Shown here piece by piece: positions 1,545 through 64,000 of a stretch of 64,000 nt of DNA. Numbering within the stretch: the stretch's first letter is position 1; each line of letters opens with the position of its first letter. The translations under genes were made by a program, and so were the position numbers. Source of the DNA: Phyllobates terribilis (lineage: Eukaryota); NCBI RefSeq assembly GCF_046119375.1, contig NW_027362765.1, positions 378,696,001 to 378,760,000 on the forward strand. Direction: 5' to 3'. The notes beneath the pieces are model-generated. The model searched no databases. It saw nothing but the letters and a program-made list of their open reading frames with translations, and was not told where the DNA came from.

Positions 1545-4500
1545 CTTCTGCTCCTCGCCCTCTTTCTCAGCCCCCGGCTTGGAGTATTCACCAGATGACA
1601 GACCGTTGCCGAGCTTCGCTCTGTGGAAACATCACCGAGAATATTCATTTGATATCTTCTGAGACTGATAGCGCCCCCCGCCCTCTAGTCCCGGCATGGT
1701 CTCTCCGCACTACTTACACTTGGGTGTTGAAATCCTGCGTGGGATCAGCGGGCGCCTTATGGAATATTTGCTCCATTCGTTCCACGTATCTGTAAACGAT
1801 CAATGCGGAGAGTTACGCTGCATGTTAACCCCTGTGATGAGCAGATACATTTGCGTATACGGTATGTAACACGGCAAGTGACCGCCATGTCTTGCTGGGT
1901 CTGCCATGCTAGGGAGGCATACACTCCTATTCACTACGGGCGCTAAGACTGCGATAAAGGAGAAGACAGAAGTGGGATATAATCTTTCATCATCTCCTCA
2001 GGGAGGATCGCAGCCGATCTGCTCCAGATTGCAAGGCTTTACATGCTGTACATAGACGATGGTGGCGGGGACCATGTGTCGCAGACACTTACTTGCGCTG
2101 GAAGGCAGGAATACTGAACACGACCTGCATGGTGGAGTTGAGATAGCAGCTGTTGCCCAGATTGCGGATCCCGGTGTACCCGGGTCCATACAGGGGTTGC
2201 AGCTGGACCCCCGATTCCTGGATCAGCTCCCATTCTCCGATCCTCTGGTTCATATCAATTTCCAGCTCGGTCATCGTCTTGTCCGTCTAGGATCGGGAAG
2301 AGACGTTACGTGTGTACGGGAGGGACCGTGGGCCGGCGGGGGTATCCTCATGCGGCCACACTCACCTTCTGCATTTTCATCATGTCGATACCAAAGTGCG
2401 ATAGATGTTCGGCCAGGTTGGGGTCCAGGACCATGTCATCTTCATCATAGGAGTAGACATCTGATCGGGAACAATGAGGAGCAAAAAAGTGTCAATTTTT
2501 ACAACATCCGAGGGGATAAATACTTTCAGATTTTTTTTTCCTTTTATTAGCTCCAATGTATAGAAAGGAAAAGAAAACTTTGCAAATAGTCGGCATTAAA
2601 TATCACGGCATTTAGGTTGGGGTCAGAATTGTATTATTTTTGTGCTGGTTTAGCCTGATCTGATCAAAACTAAAGGGGGTGGAATCCATATTAATGAAGA
2701 AACTTTGCACATAGGCTTCATAAAATATCTTCTATCGTTTTGTGTACGCAGGTTCTATGCAACTCAATGTATCAGATAGAAGTACAGTAGCCGAGCAGCG
2801 ATACATGACTGCAGGATCGGACCAATAAACAATGAGAAGCGGGTCTTCATAAGAGCTGTATACACAAAACGGGAGAAGATATCTAATGAAACCTATGTGC
2901 AAAGTTTTTTCAGTTTGTCAATATGGTTGTCTAAGTCTTAAAGGGGTTGTCCGTTCCAAACCGATAAGTCTGCAGTCACTCTGAGTGACTGCAGACTTAT
3001 GAATCCCCCCAGCAGGCGCTCTGTATACTGCAGTGATTCGCTGGTTTCTGAGTAGGGACGGGAGGGTATGTATGACTTATATATACTCCCGGTCAGTGGG
3101 CGCGGCCTTGCTCCATACAATTGTACAGAGCGAGACCGCGACCCCTCTAGTGACGTGGACGGCCAGTGGGCGTGGCCGACTAGACGGAGCGGCCTCGCTC
3201 TATACAACTGTATGGAGTGAGGCCACTGGCCAAGAGTATGTATAAGTCACTCATACCCTCCGGTCCTGACTCAGGAACCAGTGAATTCTCGCTGCGGGGA
3301 TTCATAAGTAGTCACTCAGAGTGACTGCAGACTTATCGGTATTGGACCGGACAATCCCTTTAATATTCTGAGCCCGGCCTAAATCCTGCAAAGTGACTGA
3401 TTGAGCTTGTGTAAAATGGAATAAAAAAACCTCACCTCCTCCATCTGGAGTGATGGTGCCCAGTTTGACAGCCAGCGGGTACCCGGTCTCTCTGTAATGC
3501 TGCACCGCGTGGTTATTCCCTCCGCTGCCGTCAAAGTATCGTCTGCCGCAGAGGATCGCTCCGTCTGTCATATTGAGCCACAGGTTCTCCCGCAGGTCGC
3601 ACACGCTGCACTTCCAACCACTGGTGGAAACAGTCAACAGGCAGGGAAGTGAATGAAGGCAAATCTTAAATAGCAGGATGGAGAACATTCAAAAGGTTTT
3701 GTAAGAGAAAAGGCAGAATAATGAAGTCTCTGATCTCATCTTCATATGATACAGTTCCCATTCAGAGCTGTTGCTCTCGGAGGTCCTGAGACCACCAACA
3801 ATTTAACATTCAGCTTATTAATGAGTGGTGTATGCAGGCTCAATAGAAAAATCTATGGATCTGTACTCGCGCTCAAGGATAATCTGAGCGACGAGCGGGT
3901 GGTCTTAGTACGCAGATTATCACAGATGAACCCATTACCTATTCAGTGCAGAGGACACGGATGTTTCTAGCTGGAATACCCCTTTAATTCCCTCCCTAAT
4001 GGGAATACATCACTGCCAAGGTGTAAGGTGTCATTAGGGGCGAGACGTCCGCAACGTCCATGCGTCATATGGTTATAGTCATGTGCCACCGCAGAAAAAG
4101 GTGGATGCTGAGGAGACCACCAGCAAGGGGATAAAAGAAGGGGCAAGTTTTAAACCTGCAGTAAAGTTAGATAGAAACTTTTTAATAAACAACCGGTCTG
4201 GATTCTGCAAAGTTTGTAGAGGAGCAAATGTAAGATTGCAAATCCTGGACAACTTGTCATATGTGGGAGTCAGGTGAATGAGGAGCCGTCCTGGGCGTCA
4301 TCACCCGCATCTCCACTGCTAGGTGCAAATAAAAAAGAAGCCTCCATTCCTGACTGTTGCATATCAGTCAGAATGATGAAAGTATCGGCCCCTTCAGACT
4401 AAAGGTACAATGGTAAGATCTTATCAGGAGTAAATCACTTACCAAGGAGGGATGCGGGGAGCCCCCTCAAGCTGCTGGAGGCTGAAGGCGTGCTTAGAGA

Positions 4501-17480: not shown

Positions 17481-19596
17481 TACTGCCCCCTATGTACAAG
17501 AATATAACTACTATAATACTGCCCCTATGTACAAGAATATAACTACTATAATACTGCTCCTATGTACAAGAATATAACTACTATAATACTGCCCACTATG
17601 TACAAGAATAGAACTACTATAATACTGCCACTATGTACAAGAATAGAACTACTATAATACTGCTCCCTGTGTACAAGAATAGAACTACTATAATACTGCT
17701 CCCTGTGTACAAGAATATAACTACTATAATACTGCTCCTATGTACAAGAATATAACTACTATAATACTGCCCCTATGTACAAGAATATAACTACTATAAT
17801 ACTGCTCCTATGTACAAGAATATAACTACTATAATACTGCTCCTATGTACAAGAATATAACTACTATAATACTGCTCCTATGTACAAGAATATAACTACT
17901 ATAATACTGCCCCTATGTACAAGAATATAACTACTATAATACTGCCCCTATGTACAAGAATATAACTACTATAATACTGCTCCTATGTACAAGAATATAA
18001 CTACTATAATACTGCTCCCTATGTACAAGAATATAACTACTATAATACTGCCCCTATATACAAGAATATAACCATTATAATACTGCCCCTATGTGCAAGA
18101 ATATAACTACTATAATACTGTCCCTATGTACAAGAATATAACTACTATAATACTGCCCCCTATGTACAAGAATATAACTACTATAATACTGCCCCTATGT
18201 ACAAGAATATAACTACTATAATACTGCTCCCTATGTACAAGAATATAACTACTATAATACTGCCACTATGTACAAGAATATAACTACTATAATACTGCCC
18301 CTATGTACAAGAATATAACTACTATAATACTGCCCCTATGTACAAGAATATAACTACTATAATACTGCCCCTATGTACAAGAATATAACTACTATAATAC
18401 TGCTCCTATATACAAGAATATAACTACTATAATACTGCTCCCTGTGTACAAGAATATAACTACTATAATACTGCCTCCTATGTACAAGAATATAACTACT
18501 ATAATACTGCTCCTATGTACAAGAATATAACTACTATAATACTGCCCACTATGTACAAGAATATAACTACTATAATACTGCCCACTATGTACAAGAATAT
18601 AACTACTATAATACTGCCCCTATGTACAAGAATATAACTACTATAATACTGCCCCTATGTACAAGAATATAACTACTATAATACTGCTCCCTGTGTACAA
18701 GAATATAACTACTATAATACTGCTCCTATATACAAGAATATAACTACTATAATACTGCTCCCTGTGTACAAGAATATAACTACTATAATACTGCCCCTAT
18801 GTACAAGAATATAACTACTATAATACTGCTCCTATGTACAAGAATATAACTACTATAATACTGCCCACTATGTACAAGAATAGAACTACTATAATACTGC
18901 TCCTATGTACAAGAATATAACTACTATAATACTGCTCCTATGTACAAGAATATAACTACTATAATACTGCCCCTATGTACAAGAATATAACTACTATAAT
19001 ACTGCCCCTATGTACAAGAATATAACTACTATAATACTGCTCCTATGTACAAGAATATAACTACTATAATACTGCTCCCTATGTACAAGAATATAACTAC
19101 TATAATACTGCCCCTATATACAAGAATATAACCATTATAATACTGCCCCATTGTGCAAGAATATAACTACTATAATACTGTCCCTATGTACAAGAATATA
19201 ACTACTATAATACTGCTCCTATGTACAAGAATATAACTACTATAATACTGCTCCCTGTGTACAAGAATATAACTACTATAATACTGCTCCCTATGTGCAA
19301 GAATATAACTACTATAATACTGCCCCTATATACAAGAATATAACCATTATAATACTGCTCCCTATGTACAAGAATATAACTACTATAATACTGCCCCTAT
19401 GTACAAGAATATAACTACTATAATACTGCCCCTATGTACAAGAATATAACTACTATAATACTGCCCCTATGTACAAGAATATAACTACTATAATACTGCT
19501 CCTATGTACAAGAATATAACTACTATAATACTGCCCCAATGTACAAGAATATAACTACTATAATACTGCCCCCTATGTATAAAACTACTATAATAC
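17481..19596. repeat. 35-36-bp minisatellite, about 60 copies
   Basis: Unit tatgtacaagaatataactactataatactgc(c/t)cc; fills the gap between the CDCA3 and GNB3 3' ends. Confidence 0.98.
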
Positions 19597-20222: not shown

Positions 20223-32446
<12,224 letters not shown>

Positions 32447-39475: not shown

Positions 39476-40115
39476 CCAGCAGAATAGTGAGTGCAGCTCT
39501 GGAGTATAATACAGGATATAACTCTGGATCAGCAATGTAATGTATGTACACAGTTACTCCACCAGCAGAATAGTGAGTGCAGCTCTGGAGTATAATACAG
39601 GATGTAACTCAGGATCAGTACAGGATCAGTAATGTAATGTATGTACACAGTGACTCCACCAGCAGAATAGTGAGTGCAGCTCTGGAGTATAATACAGGAT
39701 GTAACTTAGGATCATTACAGGATCAGTAATGTAATGCATGTACACGGTGACTCCACCAGCAGAATAGTGAGTGCAGCTCTGGATTATAATACAGGATGTA
39801 ACTCAGGATCAGTACAGGATCAGTAATGTAATGTATGTACACAGTGACTGCACCAGCAGAATAGTGAGTGCAGCTCTCGAGTATAATACAGGATGTAACT
39901 CAGGATCAGTACAGGATCAGTAATGTAATGTATGTACACAGTGACTGCACCAGCAGAATAGTGAGTGCAGCTCTGGAGTATAATACAGGATGTAACTCAA
40001 GATCAGTAATGTAATGTATGTACACAGTTACTGCACCAGCAGAATAGTGAGTGCAGCTCTGTAGTATAATACAGGATATAACTCAGGACCAGTACAGGAT
40101 CAGTAATGTAATGTA
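39476..40115. repeat. 97/86-bp satellite, left part
   Basis: Unit cagcagaatagtgagtgcagctctggagtataatacaggatgtaactcaggatcagt(acaggatcagt)aatgtaatgtatgtacacagtgact. Confidence 0.95.
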
Positions 40116-41744
40116 CAGTACAGACCAAAAGTTTGGACACACCTTCTCATTCAAAGATTTTTTTGTATTTTCATGACTATGAAAATTGTACATTCACACT
40201 GAAGGCATCAAAACTATGAATTAACACATGTGGAATTAAATACTTAACAAAAAGGTGTGAAACAACTGAAAATATGTCTTATATTCTAGGTTCTTCACAG
40301 TAGCCACCTTTTGCTTTGATGACTGCTTTGCACATTCTTGGCATTCTCTTGATGAGCTTCAAGAGGTAGTCACCGGAAATGGTCTTCCAACAATCTTGAA
40401 GGAGTTCCCAGAGATGCTTAGCACTTGTTGGCCCTTTTGCCTTCACTCTGCGGTCCAGCTCACCCCAAACCATCTCGATTGGGTTCAGGTCTGGTGACTG
40501 TGGAGGCCAGGTCATCTGGCGTAGCACCCCATCACTCTCCTTCTTGGTCAAATAGCCCTTACACAGCCTGGAGGGGTGTTTGGGGTCATTGTCCTGTTGA
40601 AAAATAAATGATGGTCCAACTAAACGCAAACCGGATGGAATAGCATGCCGCTGCCAGATGCTGTGGTAGCCATGCTGGTTCAGTATGCCTTCAATTTTGA
40701 ATAAATCCCCAACAGTGTCTCCAGCAGAGCACCCCCACACCATCACACCTCCTCCTCCATGCTTCACGGTGGGAACCAGGCATGTAGAGTCCATCCGTTC
40801 ACCTTTTCTGCGTCGCACAAAGACACGGTGGTTGGAACCAAAGATCTCAAATTTGGACTCATCAGACCAAAGCACAGATTTCCACTGGTCTAATGTCCAT
40901 TCCTTGTGTTCTTTAGCCCAAACAAGTCTCTTCTGCTTGTTGCCTGTCCTTAGCAGTGGTTTCCTAGCAGCTATTTTACCATGAAGGCCTGCTGCACAAA
41001 GTCTCCTCTTAACAGTTGTTGTAGAGATGTGTCTGCTGCTAGAACTCTGTGTGGCATTGACCTGGTCTCTAATCTGAGCTGCTGTTAACCTGCGATTTCT
41101 GAGGCTGGTGACTCAGATAAACTTATCCTCAGAAGCAGAGGTGACTCTTGGTCTTCCTTTCCTGGGGCGGTCCTCATGTGAGCCAGTTTCTTTGTAGCGC
41201 TTGATGGTTTTTGCAACTGCACTTGGGGACACTTTCAAAGTTTTCCCAATTTTTCGGACTGACTGACCTTCATTTCTTAAAGTAACGATGGCCACTCGTT
41301 TTTCTTTACTTAGCTGCTTTTTTCTTGCCATAATACAAATTCTAACAGTCTATTCAGTAGGACTATCAGCTGTGTATCCACCAGACTTCTGCACAACACA
41401 ACTGATGGTCCCAACCCCATTTATAAGGCAAGAAATCCCACTTATTAAACCTGACAGGGCTCACCTGTGAAGTGAAAACCATTTCCGGTGACTACCTCTT
41501 GAAGCTCATCAAGAGAATGCCAAGAGTGTGCAAAGCAGTCATCAAAGCAAAAGGTGGCTACTTTGAAGAACCTAGAATATAAGACATATTTTCAGTTGTT
41601 TCACACTTTTTTTTAAGTATATAATTCCACATGTGTTAATTCATAGTTTTGATGCCTTCAGTGTGAATGTACAATTTTCAAAGTCATGAAAATACAGAGA
41701 AATCTTTAAATGAGAAGGTGTGTCCAAACTTTTGGTCTGTACTG
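40116..41744 (-). mobile_element. DD38E (Intruder-type) Tc1/mariner element, copy A
   Basis: About 268-bp TIRs and a TA TSD; ORF 40279-41331 (1053 nt) with a single TGA at 41113-41115; 38 residues between QQD and PIE. Confidence 0.95.
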
Positions 41745-41746
41745 TA

Positions 41747-42146
41747 TGTACACAGTGACTCCACCAGCAGAATAGTGAGTGCTGCTCTGGAGTATAATAC
41801 AGGATGTAACTCAGGATCAGTAATGTAATGTATGTACACAGTGACTCCACCAGCAGAATAGTGAGTGCAGCTCTGGAGTATAATACAGGATGTAACTCAG
41901 GATCAGTAATGTAATGTATGTACACAGTGACTCCACCAGCAGAATAGTGAGTGCAGCTCTGGAGTATAATACAGGATGTAACTCAGGATCAGTAATGTAA
42001 TGTATGTACACAGTGACTGCACCAGCAGAATAGTGAGTGCAGCTCTGGAGTATAATACAGGATGTAACTCAGGATCAGTAATGTAATGTATGTACACAGT
42101 GACACCACCAGCAGAATAGTGAGTGCCGCTCTGGAGTATAATACAA
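41747..42146. repeat. 97/86-bp satellite, right part (86-bp units)
   Basis: Resumes in register after the TA TSD. Confidence 0.95.
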
Positions 42147-43104
42147 GCTGTCACCCAGGAACTGCATAAAAGCAGGTGTAAGGGCTCTAGTCAGTGTAGA
42201 GATAGAAATTGACACAAACTGTATGTAACTCTTGACACAGGACAGCAGCATAAAATAATCTGAAGATGTAAAGTTGCAGTGTAAACAATCCAAGCACCAA
42301 AGTGATGTAAAATATGAACAAGGGCAGTAACACCACGACCGCCATCCTTTCTACCAGGACAGGCATCGCTGCAGGTGCATATGGGACTTCAATCTCTCTT
42401 CTCCATTACAATGCAGAGGCAACACAGGAGATAATTTTGCAAATAGTTTACATGCAGATGCTTTCCTACCGTTTTGTGTATGCAGCTCCTGTGCAGACTT
42501 GTGTGTTTTCATGGTTGAAGACTACAAATAATCTGTTTTCTCTTATCTTTTTAACTTTTCTATTATCTTTAGGTATTCAAGAAGAGCGCAAGGGAGGAAG
42601 TGGAGAGCCCACAACTGAGGATCAGACTACAAACATGGTTTGTTTGTAGTCTGTTACCATGGCAATGCATAGGTTGGTACAGTAACTGTATACAAAATGG
42701 TAATTTAAAAATAAAAATAAGACTAATTATTTTTTTTTACAATTGTTGTATATTATTTTAGGTACTTTGAAGCAATTAACTCTCCCTCCACACACTACCG
42801 TGCTATCCCTAAAATGGTCACTAGAGGAAAATATGGCAGGCACTCAACGGTAGATGTTTGGTGCTCCGTGGTAGTGGAGATACAGGTGATGATAAATGCC
42901 ACAGCACTCATATAAATCCAAATATACGTATTTATTAATATAGCATGCGTCTGTACAGAAGAGCGCCAACATTTCGGTCAACAGACCTTTTTCATGAGAA
43001 ACATAAGAATATAAAATGCAAAATTGCATGAGAAAAAAATCATACAGAAAAAAATCATACAGAAAATTCTGTATGATTTTTTTCACATGCAGTTTTGTAT
43101 TATA

Positions 43105-50329: not shown

Positions 50330-51790
50330 CAGTGGAGCACTACTATAATGATGACGTCCATGCAGTCAGCTCATGATGGGAGTTGTAGTCTTCTATGTTT
50401 AGAGTTCAACAGAATTGTATTATGCCCACATCCAGCAATAGGTCATGATGAGAGTTGTAGATTTCTATGTATAGGGAATAATAAAACTACCGTATACTAT
50501 GGTTGTGCTAATATCTCAGGTCATGTTGGGGGTTGTAGTATTCTAAGTAAAGCATAGTAGAATTGTTATTTGGACATATCCTGCAGGCGATTCACATTGG
50601 GGGTCTTAGTTTTCAATGTGTAGCGTATAAAGGTATTTTATTATATTCATGACGAATGGACGGGTCATGTTGGGAGTTGTAGTGCTCTATTCATAGGGCA
50701 TAATAGAATAGTAGAGTTGTGTCCAGTGGTCGTATCATGCTGGGGGTTGTAGTCTTATATGTATAGACTATAAAAGAATTATATTATAATCATGTCTTGT
50801 GGTTGGATCATGCTGGGGGTTGTAGTCTCTTATGTATAGAGTATGACAGAGCAATACTATAATCATGTCCAGCTTTTGGGTCTAAATGAGGGTTATAGTC
50901 CTTTATGTACAGAGTATAATAAAATATCATTATAATCATGTGCAGTGGTCTGGTAATGTTGGGGGTTGTAGTGCTCTACGTATAGAGAATAATAGAATAT
51001 CATTATAATCATGTGCAGTGGTCTGGTAATGTTGGGGGTTGTAGTGCTCTACGTATAGAGAATAATAGAATATCATTATAATCATGTGCAGTGGTCTGGT
51101 AATGTTGGGGGTTGTAGTGCTCTACGTATAGAGAATAGAATATCATTATAATCATGTCCAGTGGTCGGGTCATGTTGGGGGTTGTAGTGCTCTACGTATA
51201 AAGAATAATAGAATATCATTATAATCATGTCCAGTGGTCGGGTCATGTTGGGGGTTGTAGTGCTCTATGTATAAAGAATAATAGAATATCATTATAATCA
51301 TGTCCAGTGATCGGGTCATGTTGGGGGTTGTAGTGCTCTACGTATAAAGAATTATAGAATATCATTATAATCGTGTCCAGTGGTCGAGTAATGTTGGGGG
51401 TTGTAGTGCTCTACGTATAAAGAATTATAGAATATCATTATAATCGTGTCCAGTGGTCGGGTCATGTTGGGGGTTGTGGTATTTGATATATTAAGTACAA
51501 TGGAATTATATAATGGTCTTGTGCGGTATTTTTTTCACATTGGGAGTAGTAGTGCTTTTTGTATAGACTATAATAGAAATATTATTTTAATTACGCCCAG
51601 GGGGTCATGTTGGGAGGTGTAGTACTGTGTGTGTAGAGATAAAATAGGTCAATAATGTAATTGTATTATGATCGGGACCAGAATTATGATCATGGTGGGG
51701 GTTGTAGTCTTCTTTGTATTGAGTATAATAGAATTGTACTTTTTGGTCCGATCATGTTGGGAGGTGTAGTGATGATCTTATTCGGGGTTG
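50330..51790. repeat. 73-bp minisatellite with homogeneous core and diverged flanks
   Basis: tgcagtgg at 50941, 51014 and 51087; core about 50930-51480. Confidence 0.9.
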
Positions 51791-58710: not shown

Positions 58711-58716
58711 TATATA

Positions 58717-60355
<1,639 letters not shown>

Positions 60356-60437
60356 TAGTTTTCTAATGTAGGAAAAATTAACTGTCCCCCTCCACCATTA
60401 GTTTGCTGACTGGTTCTGATGAATAAGATTAGTAATA

Positions 60438-62832
60438 CAGGTGCATCTCACTAAATTAGAATATAGTCAAAAAGTTAATTTATTTCAGTTCTTCAATACA
60501 AAAAGTGAAACTCATATATTATATAGAGTCATTACACGCAGAGGGATCTATTATATAGAGTCATTACACGCAGAGGGATCTATTATATAGAGTCATTACA
60601 CGCAGAGGGATCTATTATATAGAGTCATTACACGCAGAGGGATCTATTATATAGAGTCATTACACGCAGAGGGATCTATTATATAGAGTCATTACACGCA
60701 GAGGGATCTATTATATAGAGTCATTACACACAGAGCGATCTATTATATAGAGTCATTACACACAGAGCGATCTATTATATAGAGTCATTACACGCAGAGG
60801 GATCTATTATATAGAGTCATTACACGCAGAGGGATCTATTATATAGAGTCATTACACACAGAGCGATCTATTATATAGAGTCATTACACACAGAGCGATC
60901 TATTATATAGAGTCATTACACACAGAGCGATCTATTATATAGAGTCATTACACACAGAGGGATCTATTATATAGAGTCATTACACGCAGAGTGATCTATT
61001 ATATAGAGTCATTACACGCAGAGGGATCTATTATATAGAGTCATTACACACAGAGGGATCTATTATATAGAGTCATTACACACAGAGGGATCTATTATAT
61101 AGAGTCATTACACACAGAGGGATCTATTATATAGAGTCATTACACACAGAGGGATCTATTATATAGAGTCATTACACACAGAGGGATCTATTATATAGAG
61201 TCATTACACACAGAGCGATCTATTATATAGAGTCATTACACGCAGAGCGATCTATTATATAGAGTCATTACACGCAGAGCGATCTATTATATAGAGTCAT
61301 TACACGCAGAGGGATCTATTATATAGAGTCATTACACGCAGAGTGATCTATTATATAGAGTCATTACACGCAGAGGGATCTATTATATAGAGTCATTACA
61401 CACAGAGGGATCTATTATATAGAGTCATTACACACAGAGGGATCTATTATATAGAGTCATTACACACAGAGGGATCTATTATATAGAGTCATTACACACA
61501 GAGGGATCTATTATATAGAGTCATTACACACAGAGGGATCTATTATATAGAGTCATTACACACAGAGGGATCTATTATATAGAGTCATTACACACAGAGG
61601 GATCTATTATATAGAGTCATTACACACAGAGGGATCTATTATATAGAGTCATTACACACAGAGGGATCTATTATATAGAGTCATTACACACAGAGGGATC
61701 TATTATATAGAGTCATTACACACAGAGAGATCTATTATATAGAGTCATTACAGACAGAGTGATCTATTTCACGTGTTTATTTCTGTTAATGTTGATGATT
61801 ATGGCTTACAGCCAATGAAAACACAAAAGTCATTATCTCAGTAAATTAGAATACTTTATAACAACAGCTTGAAAAATGTTTTTAAAATCTGAAATGTTTG
61901 TTCAGTAAATGCCTCAATACTTGGTCGGGCTCCTTCTGCATCAATTACTGCATCAATGCGGCAATGTGGCATGGAGGGATCAGCCTGTGGCATGGAGGGA
62001 TCAGCCTGTGGCTGCTGAGGTGTTATGGAAGCCCAGGTGGCTTTGATAGCAGCCTTCAGCTCGTCTGCATTGTTGGGTCTGGTGTCTCTCATCTTCCTCT
62101 TGACAATACCCCATAGATTCTCTATAATAGATTCTCTATGGGGTTAAGGTCAGGCGAGTTTGCTGCCAATCAAGCACAGTGATACTGTTGTGTGTAAACC
62201 AGGTATTGGTACTTTTGGCCGTGTGGACAGGGGCCAAGTCCTGCTGGAGAATGACATTTCCATCTCCATAAAGCTTGTCGGCAGAGGGAAGCATGAAGTG
62301 CTGTAACATGTCCTGGTAGACGGCTGCACTGACTTTGGTCTTGATAAAACACAGTGGACCTCCACCAGCAGATGACATGGCCCCCAAACCATCACTGATT
62401 GTGGAGACTTCACACTAGACCTCCAGCAGCTTGGATTGTGGCCTCTCCACTCTTCCTCCAGACTCTGGGACCTTGTGGAGTGTGTCAATGACTGCCTTCT
62501 GGACATCTGTTACGTCAGCAGTCTTCCCAATGATTGTGGAGCCTACTGAAACAGACTAAGGGACCTTTCTAAACGCTTAGGAAGCCTTTGCATGTGTTTT
62601 TTGTTAATTATAACGAGATAATGGCTTTTGTGTTTTCATTGGCTGTAAGCCATAATCATCAACATTAACAGAAATAAACACTTGAAATAGATCACTCTGT
62701 CTGTAATGACTCTATATAATAGATCACTCTGTCTGTAATGACTCTATATAATATATGAGTTTCACTTTTTGTATTGAAGAACTGAAATAGAATATCATCA
62801 AAAAGTTAATTCTAGTTTGTGAGATGCACCTG
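60438..62832 (-). mobile_element. Internally deleted Tc1 with an expanded left TIR
   Basis: TA-caggtgcatctcac...gtgagatgcacctg-TA; transposase remnants with QQDLAP on the - strand at 61856-62580. Confidence 0.9.
60517..61764. repeat. 39 x 32-bp array inside the Tc1 TIR
   Basis: Unit tattatatagagtcattacac(a/g)cagag(g/c/t)gatc; 1248 bp = 39 units. Confidence 0.97.
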
Positions 62833-62834
62833 TA

Positions 62835-64000
62835 TATGTGCAAAGTGATTCCACCAGCAGAATAGTGAGTGCAGCTCTGCAGTATAATACAGGATGTAAC
62901 TCAGGATCAGTAATGTAATGTATGTACACAGTGACTGCACCAGCAGAATAGTGAGTGCAGCTCTGGAGTATAATACAGGATGTAACTCAGGATCAGTAAT
63001 GTAATGTATGTACACAGTGACTGCACCAGCAGAATAGTGAGTGCAGCTCTGGAGTATAATACAGGATGTAACTCAGGATCAGTACAGGATCAGTAATGTA
63101 ATGTATGTACACAGTGACTGCAGCAGCAGAATAGTGAGTGCAGCTCTGGAGTATAATACAGGATGTAACTCAGGATCAGTACAGGATCAGTAATGTAATG
63201 TATGTACACAGTGACTGCACCAGCAGAATAGTGAGTGCAGCTCTGGAGTATAATACAGGACGTAACTCCGGATCAGTACAGGATTAGTAATGTAATGTAT
63301 GTACACAGTGACTGCACCAGCAGAATAGTGAGTGCAGCTCTGGAGTATAATACAGGATGTACCTCAGGATCAGTAATGTAATGTATGTACAAAGTGACTG
63401 CACCAGCAGAATAGTGAGTGCAGCTCTGGAGTATAATACAGGACGTAACTCCGGATCAGTACAGGATTAGTAATGTAATGTATGTACAAAGTGACTGAAC
63501 CAGCAGAATAGTGAGTGCAGCTCTGGAGTATAATACAGGATGTACCTCAGGATCAGTACAGGATCAGTAAAGTAATGTATGTACACAGCTACTGCACCAG
63601 CAGAATAGTGAGTGCAGCTCTGGAGTATAATACAGGATGTAACTCAGGATCAGTACAGGATCAGTAATGTAATGTATGTACACAGTGACTGCACCAGCAG
63701 AATAGTGAGTGCAGCTCTGGAGTATAATACAGGATGTAACTCAGGATCAGTACAGGATCAGTAATGTAATGTATGTACACAGTGACTGCACCAGCAGAAT
63801 AGTGAGTGCAGCTCTGGAGTATAATACAGGACGTAACTCCGGATCAGTAATGTAATGTATGTACACAGTGACTGCACCAGCAGAATAGGAAGTGCAGCTC
63901 TGGAGTATAATACAGGATGTAACTCAGGATCAGTACAGGATCAGTAATGTAATGTATGTACACAGTGACTGCACCAGCAGAATAGTGAGTGCGGCTCTGG
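62835..64000. repeat. 97/86-bp satellite, runs off the right edge
   Basis: Same monomer as 39476-42146. Confidence 0.97.

What the first reader, a model, noticed from the sequence alone, without database searches (positions are those of the whole stretch)
60438..62832. Minisatellite born inside one TIR of a Tc1: 39 copies on the left, 2 on the right
Seen: a 32-bp TIR segment bounded by TATT at both ends occurs as exactly 39 tandem copies in the left TIR and 2 copies in the right TIR (about 62686-62752). The last left copy (cagacagagtga) matches the right-TIR type, while the others carry variants in blocks. The array lies between the outer and inner aaattagaata motifs and widens their spacing by about 1.2 kb. 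Inference: microhomology seeded a duplication, then one end amplified, which probably immobilised that end. Seed and product are preserved in one element.
Basis: partly seen in the sequence, partly recalled or inferred. Interest (0 to 1): 0.72.

Follow-up and report, generated by a model that had tools for sequence, protein, structure and literature searches.

The report
Tc1 end swollen by 32-base repeat
A dead Tc1 "jumping gene" in a frog genome has one 32-base piece of its left end repeated 39 times, but this repeat is swollen across the whole genome, so it is a tidy example of a known process and not the birth of a new repeat.

Summary
There are 39 in-register 32-bp units at 60517-61764 in the left TIR and 2 units at 62690-62753 in the right TIR. 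The element is an internally deleted Tc1 of the IR/DR type with a TA on each side. The array widens the spacing between the outer and inner binding motifs to 1390 bp.

The "birth captured in one element" reading is only partly right. Four distant relatives have one unit and a conserved spacing of 171-174 bp, with TATT already present at both ends of the unit. So a microhomology-bounded duplication is plausible.

In public frog runs, however, words spanning the unit-to-unit junction are deep in three species, so the two-unit seed looks like a family trait. All 38 expanded units carry a C at unit position 21 that the right-TIR units lack. This derived unit type is roughly 10-20 times deeper than the neighbouring TIR sequence in the window's own species, and nearly absent in a second species. 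Its internal variant is at 26% genome-wide.

Local growth is real and recent: variant types sit in blocks, a 7-unit block occurs twice, and 29 of 32 positions carry no substitution at all.

This scan had already noted three other Tc1 copies in this genome with arrays of a 32-base TIR piece. Verdict: an ordinary new member of a known kind.

The parts
60436..60437 (.). TA target-site duplication, left copy (right copy at 62833-62834)
   Evidence: Read directly from the sequence
60438..60516 (+). Left TIR, outer part, with the outer binding-site motif aaattagaata at 60453-60463
   Evidence: It aligns to relatives L001-L004.
60517..61764 (+). Array of 39 units of 32 bp. Units 1-38 are the derived type (C at position 21). 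Unit 39 is the family ground-state type (G21, T28).
61765..61855 (+). Left TIR, inner part, with the inner motif aaattagaata at 61843-61853
61856..62560 (-). Broken, internally deleted Tc1 transposase remnant, with stops and frameshifts. The 92-aa DDE piece is at 62139-62414.
   Evidence: The 92-aa piece hits Tc1-like DDE_3 proteins at E down to 8.5e-35. The Pfam DDE_3 match is weak and below cutoff.
62615..62689 (-). Right TIR, inner part. The inner binding motif is lost through small deletions and substitutions.
   Evidence: Loose ends at 62611 show the family form.
62690..62753 (-). Two identical ground-state units of 32 bp in the right TIR
62754..62832 (-). Right TIR, outer part. A private 23-bp inversion at 62790-62812 flips the outer binding motif.
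   Evidence: Loose ends at 62789 in all four runs give the uninverted family form.

Best explanation
This is a dead, internally deleted copy of a very abundant poison-frog Tc1 family of the IR/DR (Sleeping Beauty-like) type. The 32-bp unit is native spacer sequence between the outer and inner transposase-binding repeats. In the wider lineage it is single-copy and bounded by a 4-bp TATT direct repeat. A slippage or microhomology-mediated duplication made two units, and that state became the family norm in these frogs (inferred). A derived unit type (C at position 21, mostly G at 28) then arose and became a genome-wide minisatellite tied to Tc1 ends in the window's species. The left TIR of this copy carries that derived type. 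It either came with the element or was acquired by exchange with another array. It was then enlarged and homogenised in place by unequal sister-chromatid exchange or replication slippage of multi-unit blocks. The array has no evident function. Shown: the anatomy, the single-unit relatives, the genome-wide excess, and the block structure. Inferred: the order of events and the mechanism of spread.
For: Anatomy. Relatives L001-L004 have one unit, a motif spacing of 171-174 bp, and TATT...TATT 32 bp apart in L001 and L003. The family is very high copy, with 33,000-57,000 contigs laid per run.

Summed word depth on derived units (61650-61733) is 4.6-7.3 million in X1 and 15-24 million in X3. Neighbouring TIR bins hold about 0.3-1.3 and 1.0-2.4 million. 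The same bins hold 1,900-3,000 in species B and 1.0-1.8 million in species C.

The G22 variant makes up 26% of depth in both runs of species A, from two separate studies, and is seen in more than 120 contigs. It is 15 of 39 units in this array. The bin over the right-TIR unit-to-unit junction is as deep as its neighbours in A and C, and about a quarter as deep in B. No well-supported 32-bp skip is listed.

Local growth: types are clustered. A 7-unit block recurs at units 15-21 and 26-32, and a 4-unit block at 5-8 and 9-12. There are no substitutions at 29 of 32 positions across 39 units. By contrast, the element differs from the family majority at about 19 of about 740 internal positions.

Earlier scan notes describe three more Tc1 copies in this genome with arrays of a 32-base TIR piece: 528 copies, 17 and 145 copies, and both arms at kilobase scale.
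Against: No second genomic copy of the family could be read directly. Unit counts in other copies therefore rest on k-mer contigs, which cannot resolve arrays. They also rest on summed depths, which the tool warns are not copy numbers. It was not shown that the 32-base pieces in the earlier notes are the same unit. How the derived units reached this TIR is unknown. C at position 21 is also the state in the distant relatives, so the polarity at that site is uncertain.
Confidence: 0.7

Rival explanations
1. One reading: this element inserted with a two-unit (or one-unit) TIR on both sides. The whole array, including its variants, then arose in place at this one locus, so seed and product are uniquely preserved here.
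For: The last left unit equals both right-TIR units. Blocks of variants and zero private substitutions point to recent local growth.
Against: All 38 other units share C21, which the supposed seed lacks. The same derived unit and its G22 variant are present at millions of summed depth in two independent studies of the species, and at lower excess in a second species. One 39-unit array cannot produce that. Other loci with arrays of a 32-base TIR piece are noted in this genome.
Confidence: 0.08
2. Mobile satellite: a master Tc1 lineage carried a short array of derived units in one TIR and kept transposing. It seeded arrays at many sites, and each then grew locally. This copy inherited its array at insertion.
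For: The derived units share substitutions genome-wide, which argues for a common origin. The array here sits in exact TIR context, with a ground-state unit at its inner edge. The two-unit form (206 bp spacing) evidently spread even though relatives conserve 171-174 bp.
Against: The closely conserved spacing in relatives suggests constraint. In Sleeping Beauty all four binding sites are needed for transposition (PMC7827188). Fewer than 10% of contigs bridging the outer flank into the first unit show the derived type. No direct evidence was obtained.
Confidence: 0.17
3. Assembly artefact: the real locus has few units and the assembler inflated the array.
For: Tandem arrays are prone to length errors, and no raw reads were available.
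Against: The array has a non-periodic, ordered pattern of seven unit types, which is not the uniform run expected from a looped graph. The same unit variants exist in independent runs.
Confidence: 0.05

Closest known systems
miDNA4 of Xenopus tropicalis, a Tc1/mariner MITE with an internal tandem repeat (Scalvenzi and Pollet, as summarised in PMC12628747 and PMC12054243)
   Same: A frog Tc1/mariner-derived non-autonomous element. The repeat occurs as one monomer or as arrays of variable length. The monomer is flanked by short AT-rich direct repeats, and microhomology is proposed to drive the copy-number change.
   Different: In miDNA4 the repeat was proposed to be a captured, pre-existing tandem repeat in the MITE body. 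Here the unit is native spacer sequence of the IR/DR-type TIR and is single-copy in relatives. The carrier here still has transposase remnants.
Tetris / TIR-220 satellite of Drosophila virilis (PMC4079207)
   Same: Tandem repeats inside the terminal inverted repeats of a DNA transposon, which expand and feed a satellite.
   Different: Tetris is a foldback-type element in an insect, with a unit of about 220 bp. It is a different superfamily. Free satellite arrays are documented there and were not tested here.
Xstir satellite from the Xmix MITE of Xenopus (Hikosaka and Kawahara, as summarised in PMC12628747 and PMC9659126)
   Same: A lineage-specific tandem repeat derived from MITE or TIR sequence in frogs, found as MITE, composite and array forms.
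   Different: A different element family. The mechanism proposed there (stem-loop excision between adjacent elements) is not indicated here.
Sleeping Beauty-type IR/DR terminal repeats (PMC7827188)
   Same: Two transposase-binding direct repeats per TIR, a TA target, and a conserved distance between the repeats. Here that distance is 171-174 bp in single-unit relatives.
   Different: The left TIR of this copy has 1390 bp between the two repeats. The right TIR has lost both.

Membership tests
Tc1/mariner superfamily, Tc1-like IR/DR element | TA target-site duplication | tested here: met
   TA lies directly outside both ends, at 60436-60437 and 62833-62834.
Tc1/mariner superfamily, Tc1-like IR/DR element | Long terminal inverted repeats with matching termini | tested here: met
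   Both ends begin CAGGTGCATCTCAC. The inverted arms are 142 nt at 96% and 109 nt at 93%.
Tc1/mariner superfamily, Tc1-like IR/DR element | Two direct repeats (outer and inner binding sites) in each TIR | tested here: inconclusive
   Met on the left, with the motif at 60453 and 61843. Not met on the right, where both are damaged. Relatives L001-L004 have both sites 171-174 bp apart. Transposase binding itself was not tested.
Tc1/mariner superfamily, Tc1-like IR/DR element | DDE (DD34E) transposase of the Tc1 type | tested here: inconclusive
   Only broken pieces remain. The 92-aa piece matches Tc1-like DDE_3 proteins at E 8.5e-35. The Pfam DDE_3 score of 17.8 bits is below the cutoff of 28.6. 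A D-to-E spacing of 34 can be read only across a frameshift, so it is inference.
Transposon-derived minisatellite / satellite DNA | Monomer homologous to part of the transposon | tested here: met
   The unit aligns to a single-copy spacer segment in the TIRs of four relatives.
Transposon-derived minisatellite / satellite DNA | Copy number varies among copies of the element, with an excess of monomers over the rest of the element | tested here: met
   39 units against 2 within one element. Depth on derived units is about 10-20 times that on the flanking TIR in species A, with the caveat that summed contig depth is not a copy number.
Transposon-derived minisatellite / satellite DNA | Free arrays without transposon flanks (a true satellite stage) | not testable with these tools
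   No frog genome assembly could be searched, and k-mer contigs cannot show array flanks.

The most novel reading that the evidence does not exclude
Tc1 copies whose IR/DR spacer already carried derived 32-bp units may have stayed mobile and spread the minisatellite through the genome. If so, this would be a transposon-borne satellite that differs about a thousand-fold between related frog species. It would also imply that IR/DR transposition tolerates large changes in the spacing of its binding sites.
Probability: 0.15. Interest if true: 0.55.

Novelty: new member of a known kind. Interest (0 to 1): 0.3.

Why it matters
It adds a clean, readable vertebrate example of a minisatellite arising from native spacer sequence of a Tc1 IR/DR terminal repeat. 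The ancestral one-unit state is visible in relatives, a two-unit family state is inferred, and the kilobase arrays are lineage-specific. It bears modestly on how transposon ends feed tandem-repeat growth in the very large, repeat-rich genomes of poison frogs. It does not open a new mechanism.

Tried and rejected
1. Looked for other copies in the window with blastn of the element minus the array. There were no hits outside 60400-62840.

2. Tried to fetch other genomic copies through protein relatives.

3. Scanned collections for the unit and for the unit-to-unit junction. Nothing was found in viral, metagenome or prokaryote genome contigs. The terminal motif was absent from viral and genome contigs and found four distant relatives in metagenomes.

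4. Tested whether the unit is a half binding site, like the Sleeping Beauty half-DR, which would make the array a transposase sponge. The best local match to the inner repeat is 8 bp, and about 9% of shuffles reach that score. Rejected as unsupported.

5. Searched our findings by sequence. The result was blank.

6. The poison-frog genome papers do not mention satellites or tandem repeats.

7. Read laying was given only 61650-62900, to avoid sending the long repeat.

Full report
**The observation**

Tandem Repeats Finder reports 39.1 copies of a 32-bp unit at 60517-61768 (98% matches, no indels) and 2.1 copies at 62686-62753. Cut in register, there are 39 complete units followed by TATT. A search allowing three mismatches finds 41 matches in the 64-kb window. 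Thirty-nine are on the + strand and two on the - strand, none lie elsewhere, and none appear in shuffles. The last left unit is identical to both right-hand units.

**The carrier element**

- The carrier spans 60438-62832. It has TA on both sides and identical termini, CAGGTGCATCTCAC.
- Its inverted arms are 142 nt at 96% and 109 nt at 93%.
- Broken transposase pieces lie on the minus strand.
- The 92-aa DDE piece matches Tc1-like DDE_3 proteins at E down to 8.5e-35. Alone it stays below Pfam's cutoff.
- Without the array the element is about 1.1 kb, so it is internally deleted and non-autonomous.

The aaattagaata motif occurs at 60453 and 61843, 1390 bp apart. On the right TIR both motifs are gone. 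The outer one is flipped by a private 23-bp inversion at 62790-62812, and the inner one is damaged. In all four public runs, contigs that run off the window sequence at 62789 carry the uninverted form. At 62611, contigs of species B and C carry the undamaged inner motif. The element was therefore immobile regardless of the array.

**The ancestral state**

The terminal motif retrieved four metagenome contigs, L001-L004. These are Tc1 relatives with 70-86% identity in the comparable TIR part. L002 and L003 continue into coding-like sequence that resembles the window's N-terminal transposase remnant; this was judged by eye and not aligned.

- All four have exactly one unit at the homologous place.
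- Their outer-to-inner motif spacing is 174, 173, 172 and 171 bp.
- The window's 1390 bp equals 174 + 38 x 32.
- In L001 and L003 the single unit is already bounded by TATT, 32 bp apart.

So a duplication mediated by microhomology or slippage is a reasonable origin for the second unit.

**Where the seed and the array arose**

One lay of Logan contigs on 61650-62900 used two runs of the window's species from different studies (X1, X3) and one run each of two other species (X9, X13). The family is very abundant, with 33,000-57,000 contigs laid per run.

The bin covering the right-TIR unit-to-unit junction is as deep as its neighbours in species A and C, and about a quarter as deep in B. No well-supported 32-bp skip is listed. 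Two or more units therefore looks like a family trait older than this insertion.

| Run (species) | Summed depth on derived units, 61650-61733 | Neighbouring TIR bins (61734-61859) |
|---|---|---|
| X1 (A) | 4.6-7.3 million | about 0.3-1.3 million |
| X3 (A) | 15-24 million | about 1.0-2.4 million |
| X9 (B) | 1,900-3,000 | about 0.1-1.1 million |
| X13 (C) | 1.0-1.8 million | about 0.5-1.1 million |

The G variant at unit position 22 makes up 26% of depth in both runs of species A and is seen in more than 120 contigs. In this array it is 15 of 39 units. A single 39-unit array cannot account for such depths.

All 38 expanded units share C at position 21, whereas the last left unit and both right units have G. 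No alternative letter reaches 10% at those ground-state units in any run. The expanded units therefore belong to a derived unit type that is spread through the species' genome. They are not a private product of this element.

Caveats apply. These are k-mer contigs, summed depth is not a copy number, and arrays cannot be resolved from them.

**Earlier notes of this scan**

The earlier notes fit this picture. Three other loci in the same genome are described as dead Tc1 copies with a 32-base TIR piece amplified:

- 528 copies (s1-237611);
- 17 and 145 copies (s1-224878);
- both arms at kilobase scale (s1-218010).

I could not check that their unit is the same one. My depth result supports the general claim that there are many more. 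Earlier notes also call the genome poison-frog-like, or golden poison frog. I did not test that.

**Local growth**

Local growth is nonetheless real.

- Only positions 21, 22 and 28 vary.
- Unit types are clustered: 23 adjacent identical pairs against 9.8 expected, with none of 10,000 shuffles reaching 23.
- A 7-unit block recurs at units 15-21 and 26-32, and a 4-unit block at 5-8 and 9-12.
- The other 29 positions show no substitution in 39 units (about 1,130 bases).
- Meanwhile the element's internal part differs from the family majority at about 19 of about 740 positions, 8 of them at 90% or more.

The present array is therefore much younger than the insertion, or is continually homogenised. 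That is the expected signature of unequal exchange or slippage of multi-unit blocks.

**Mechanism**

Most likely (confidence 0.7), events ran in this order:

1. A single native spacer unit bounded by TATT was duplicated.
2. The two-unit state became the family norm in these frogs.
3. A derived unit type arose and became a genome-wide, Tc1-end-associated minisatellite in this species.
4. This copy's left TIR holds that type and enlarged it in place.

How the derived units reached this TIR is open. They may have been inherited from an array-bearing master or acquired by exchange with another array.

**Rivals**

- Purely local birth: 0.08.
- Spread by transposition of array-bearing elements: 0.17. 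This is a special case that is compatible with the main reading.
- Assembly artefact: 0.05.

**Comparison with known systems**

Tandem repeats arising from transposon ends or internal segments are well documented:

- miDNA4, a Tc1/mariner MITE of Xenopus with one to many monomers flanked by AT-rich microhomologies;
- Xstir from the Xmix MITE;
- Tetris/TIR-220 in Drosophila virilis.

For Sleeping Beauty, all four binding sites are needed for transposition. The poison-frog genome papers report abundant Tc1 but do not mention this repeat. This is a new member of a known kind.

**Limits**

Noticed in passing
window 62790-62812: A private 23-bp inversion in the outer part of the right TIR flips the outer binding motif. 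Contigs of all four runs carry the uninverted form.
   Followed up: yes
window 61965-62012 and 62113-62139: Two more small tandem duplications lie inside the transposase remnant of the same element: 21 bp x 2.3 and 14 bp x 1.9, both 100% matches. This hints at a local tendency to slippage duplications.
   Followed up: no
window 62835-64000, 39526-40115, 41738-42160: A satellite of 86-97 bp abuts the right end of the element, so the Tc1 sits at its edge. It recurs twice elsewhere in the window. Its summed depth in the runs (3-20 million) is as high as that of the 32-bp unit.
   Followed up: partly
window 58715-60357: A different Tc1-like element lies 80 bp upstream. Its terminal 30-mers are inverted, with one mismatch.
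   Followed up: partly
window 17481-19579, 23677-24951, 50640-51477: The window is rich in other minisatellite arrays: 35 bp x 59, 71 bp x 18 and 73 bp x 11.6. This genome region is generally prone to arrays.
   Followed up: no
L001-L004: Four metagenome contigs carry vertebrate-type Tc1 ends of the same lineage, presumably host DNA in metagenome samples. Their binding-motif spacing is held at 171-174 bp despite 70-86% identity.
   Followed up: partly
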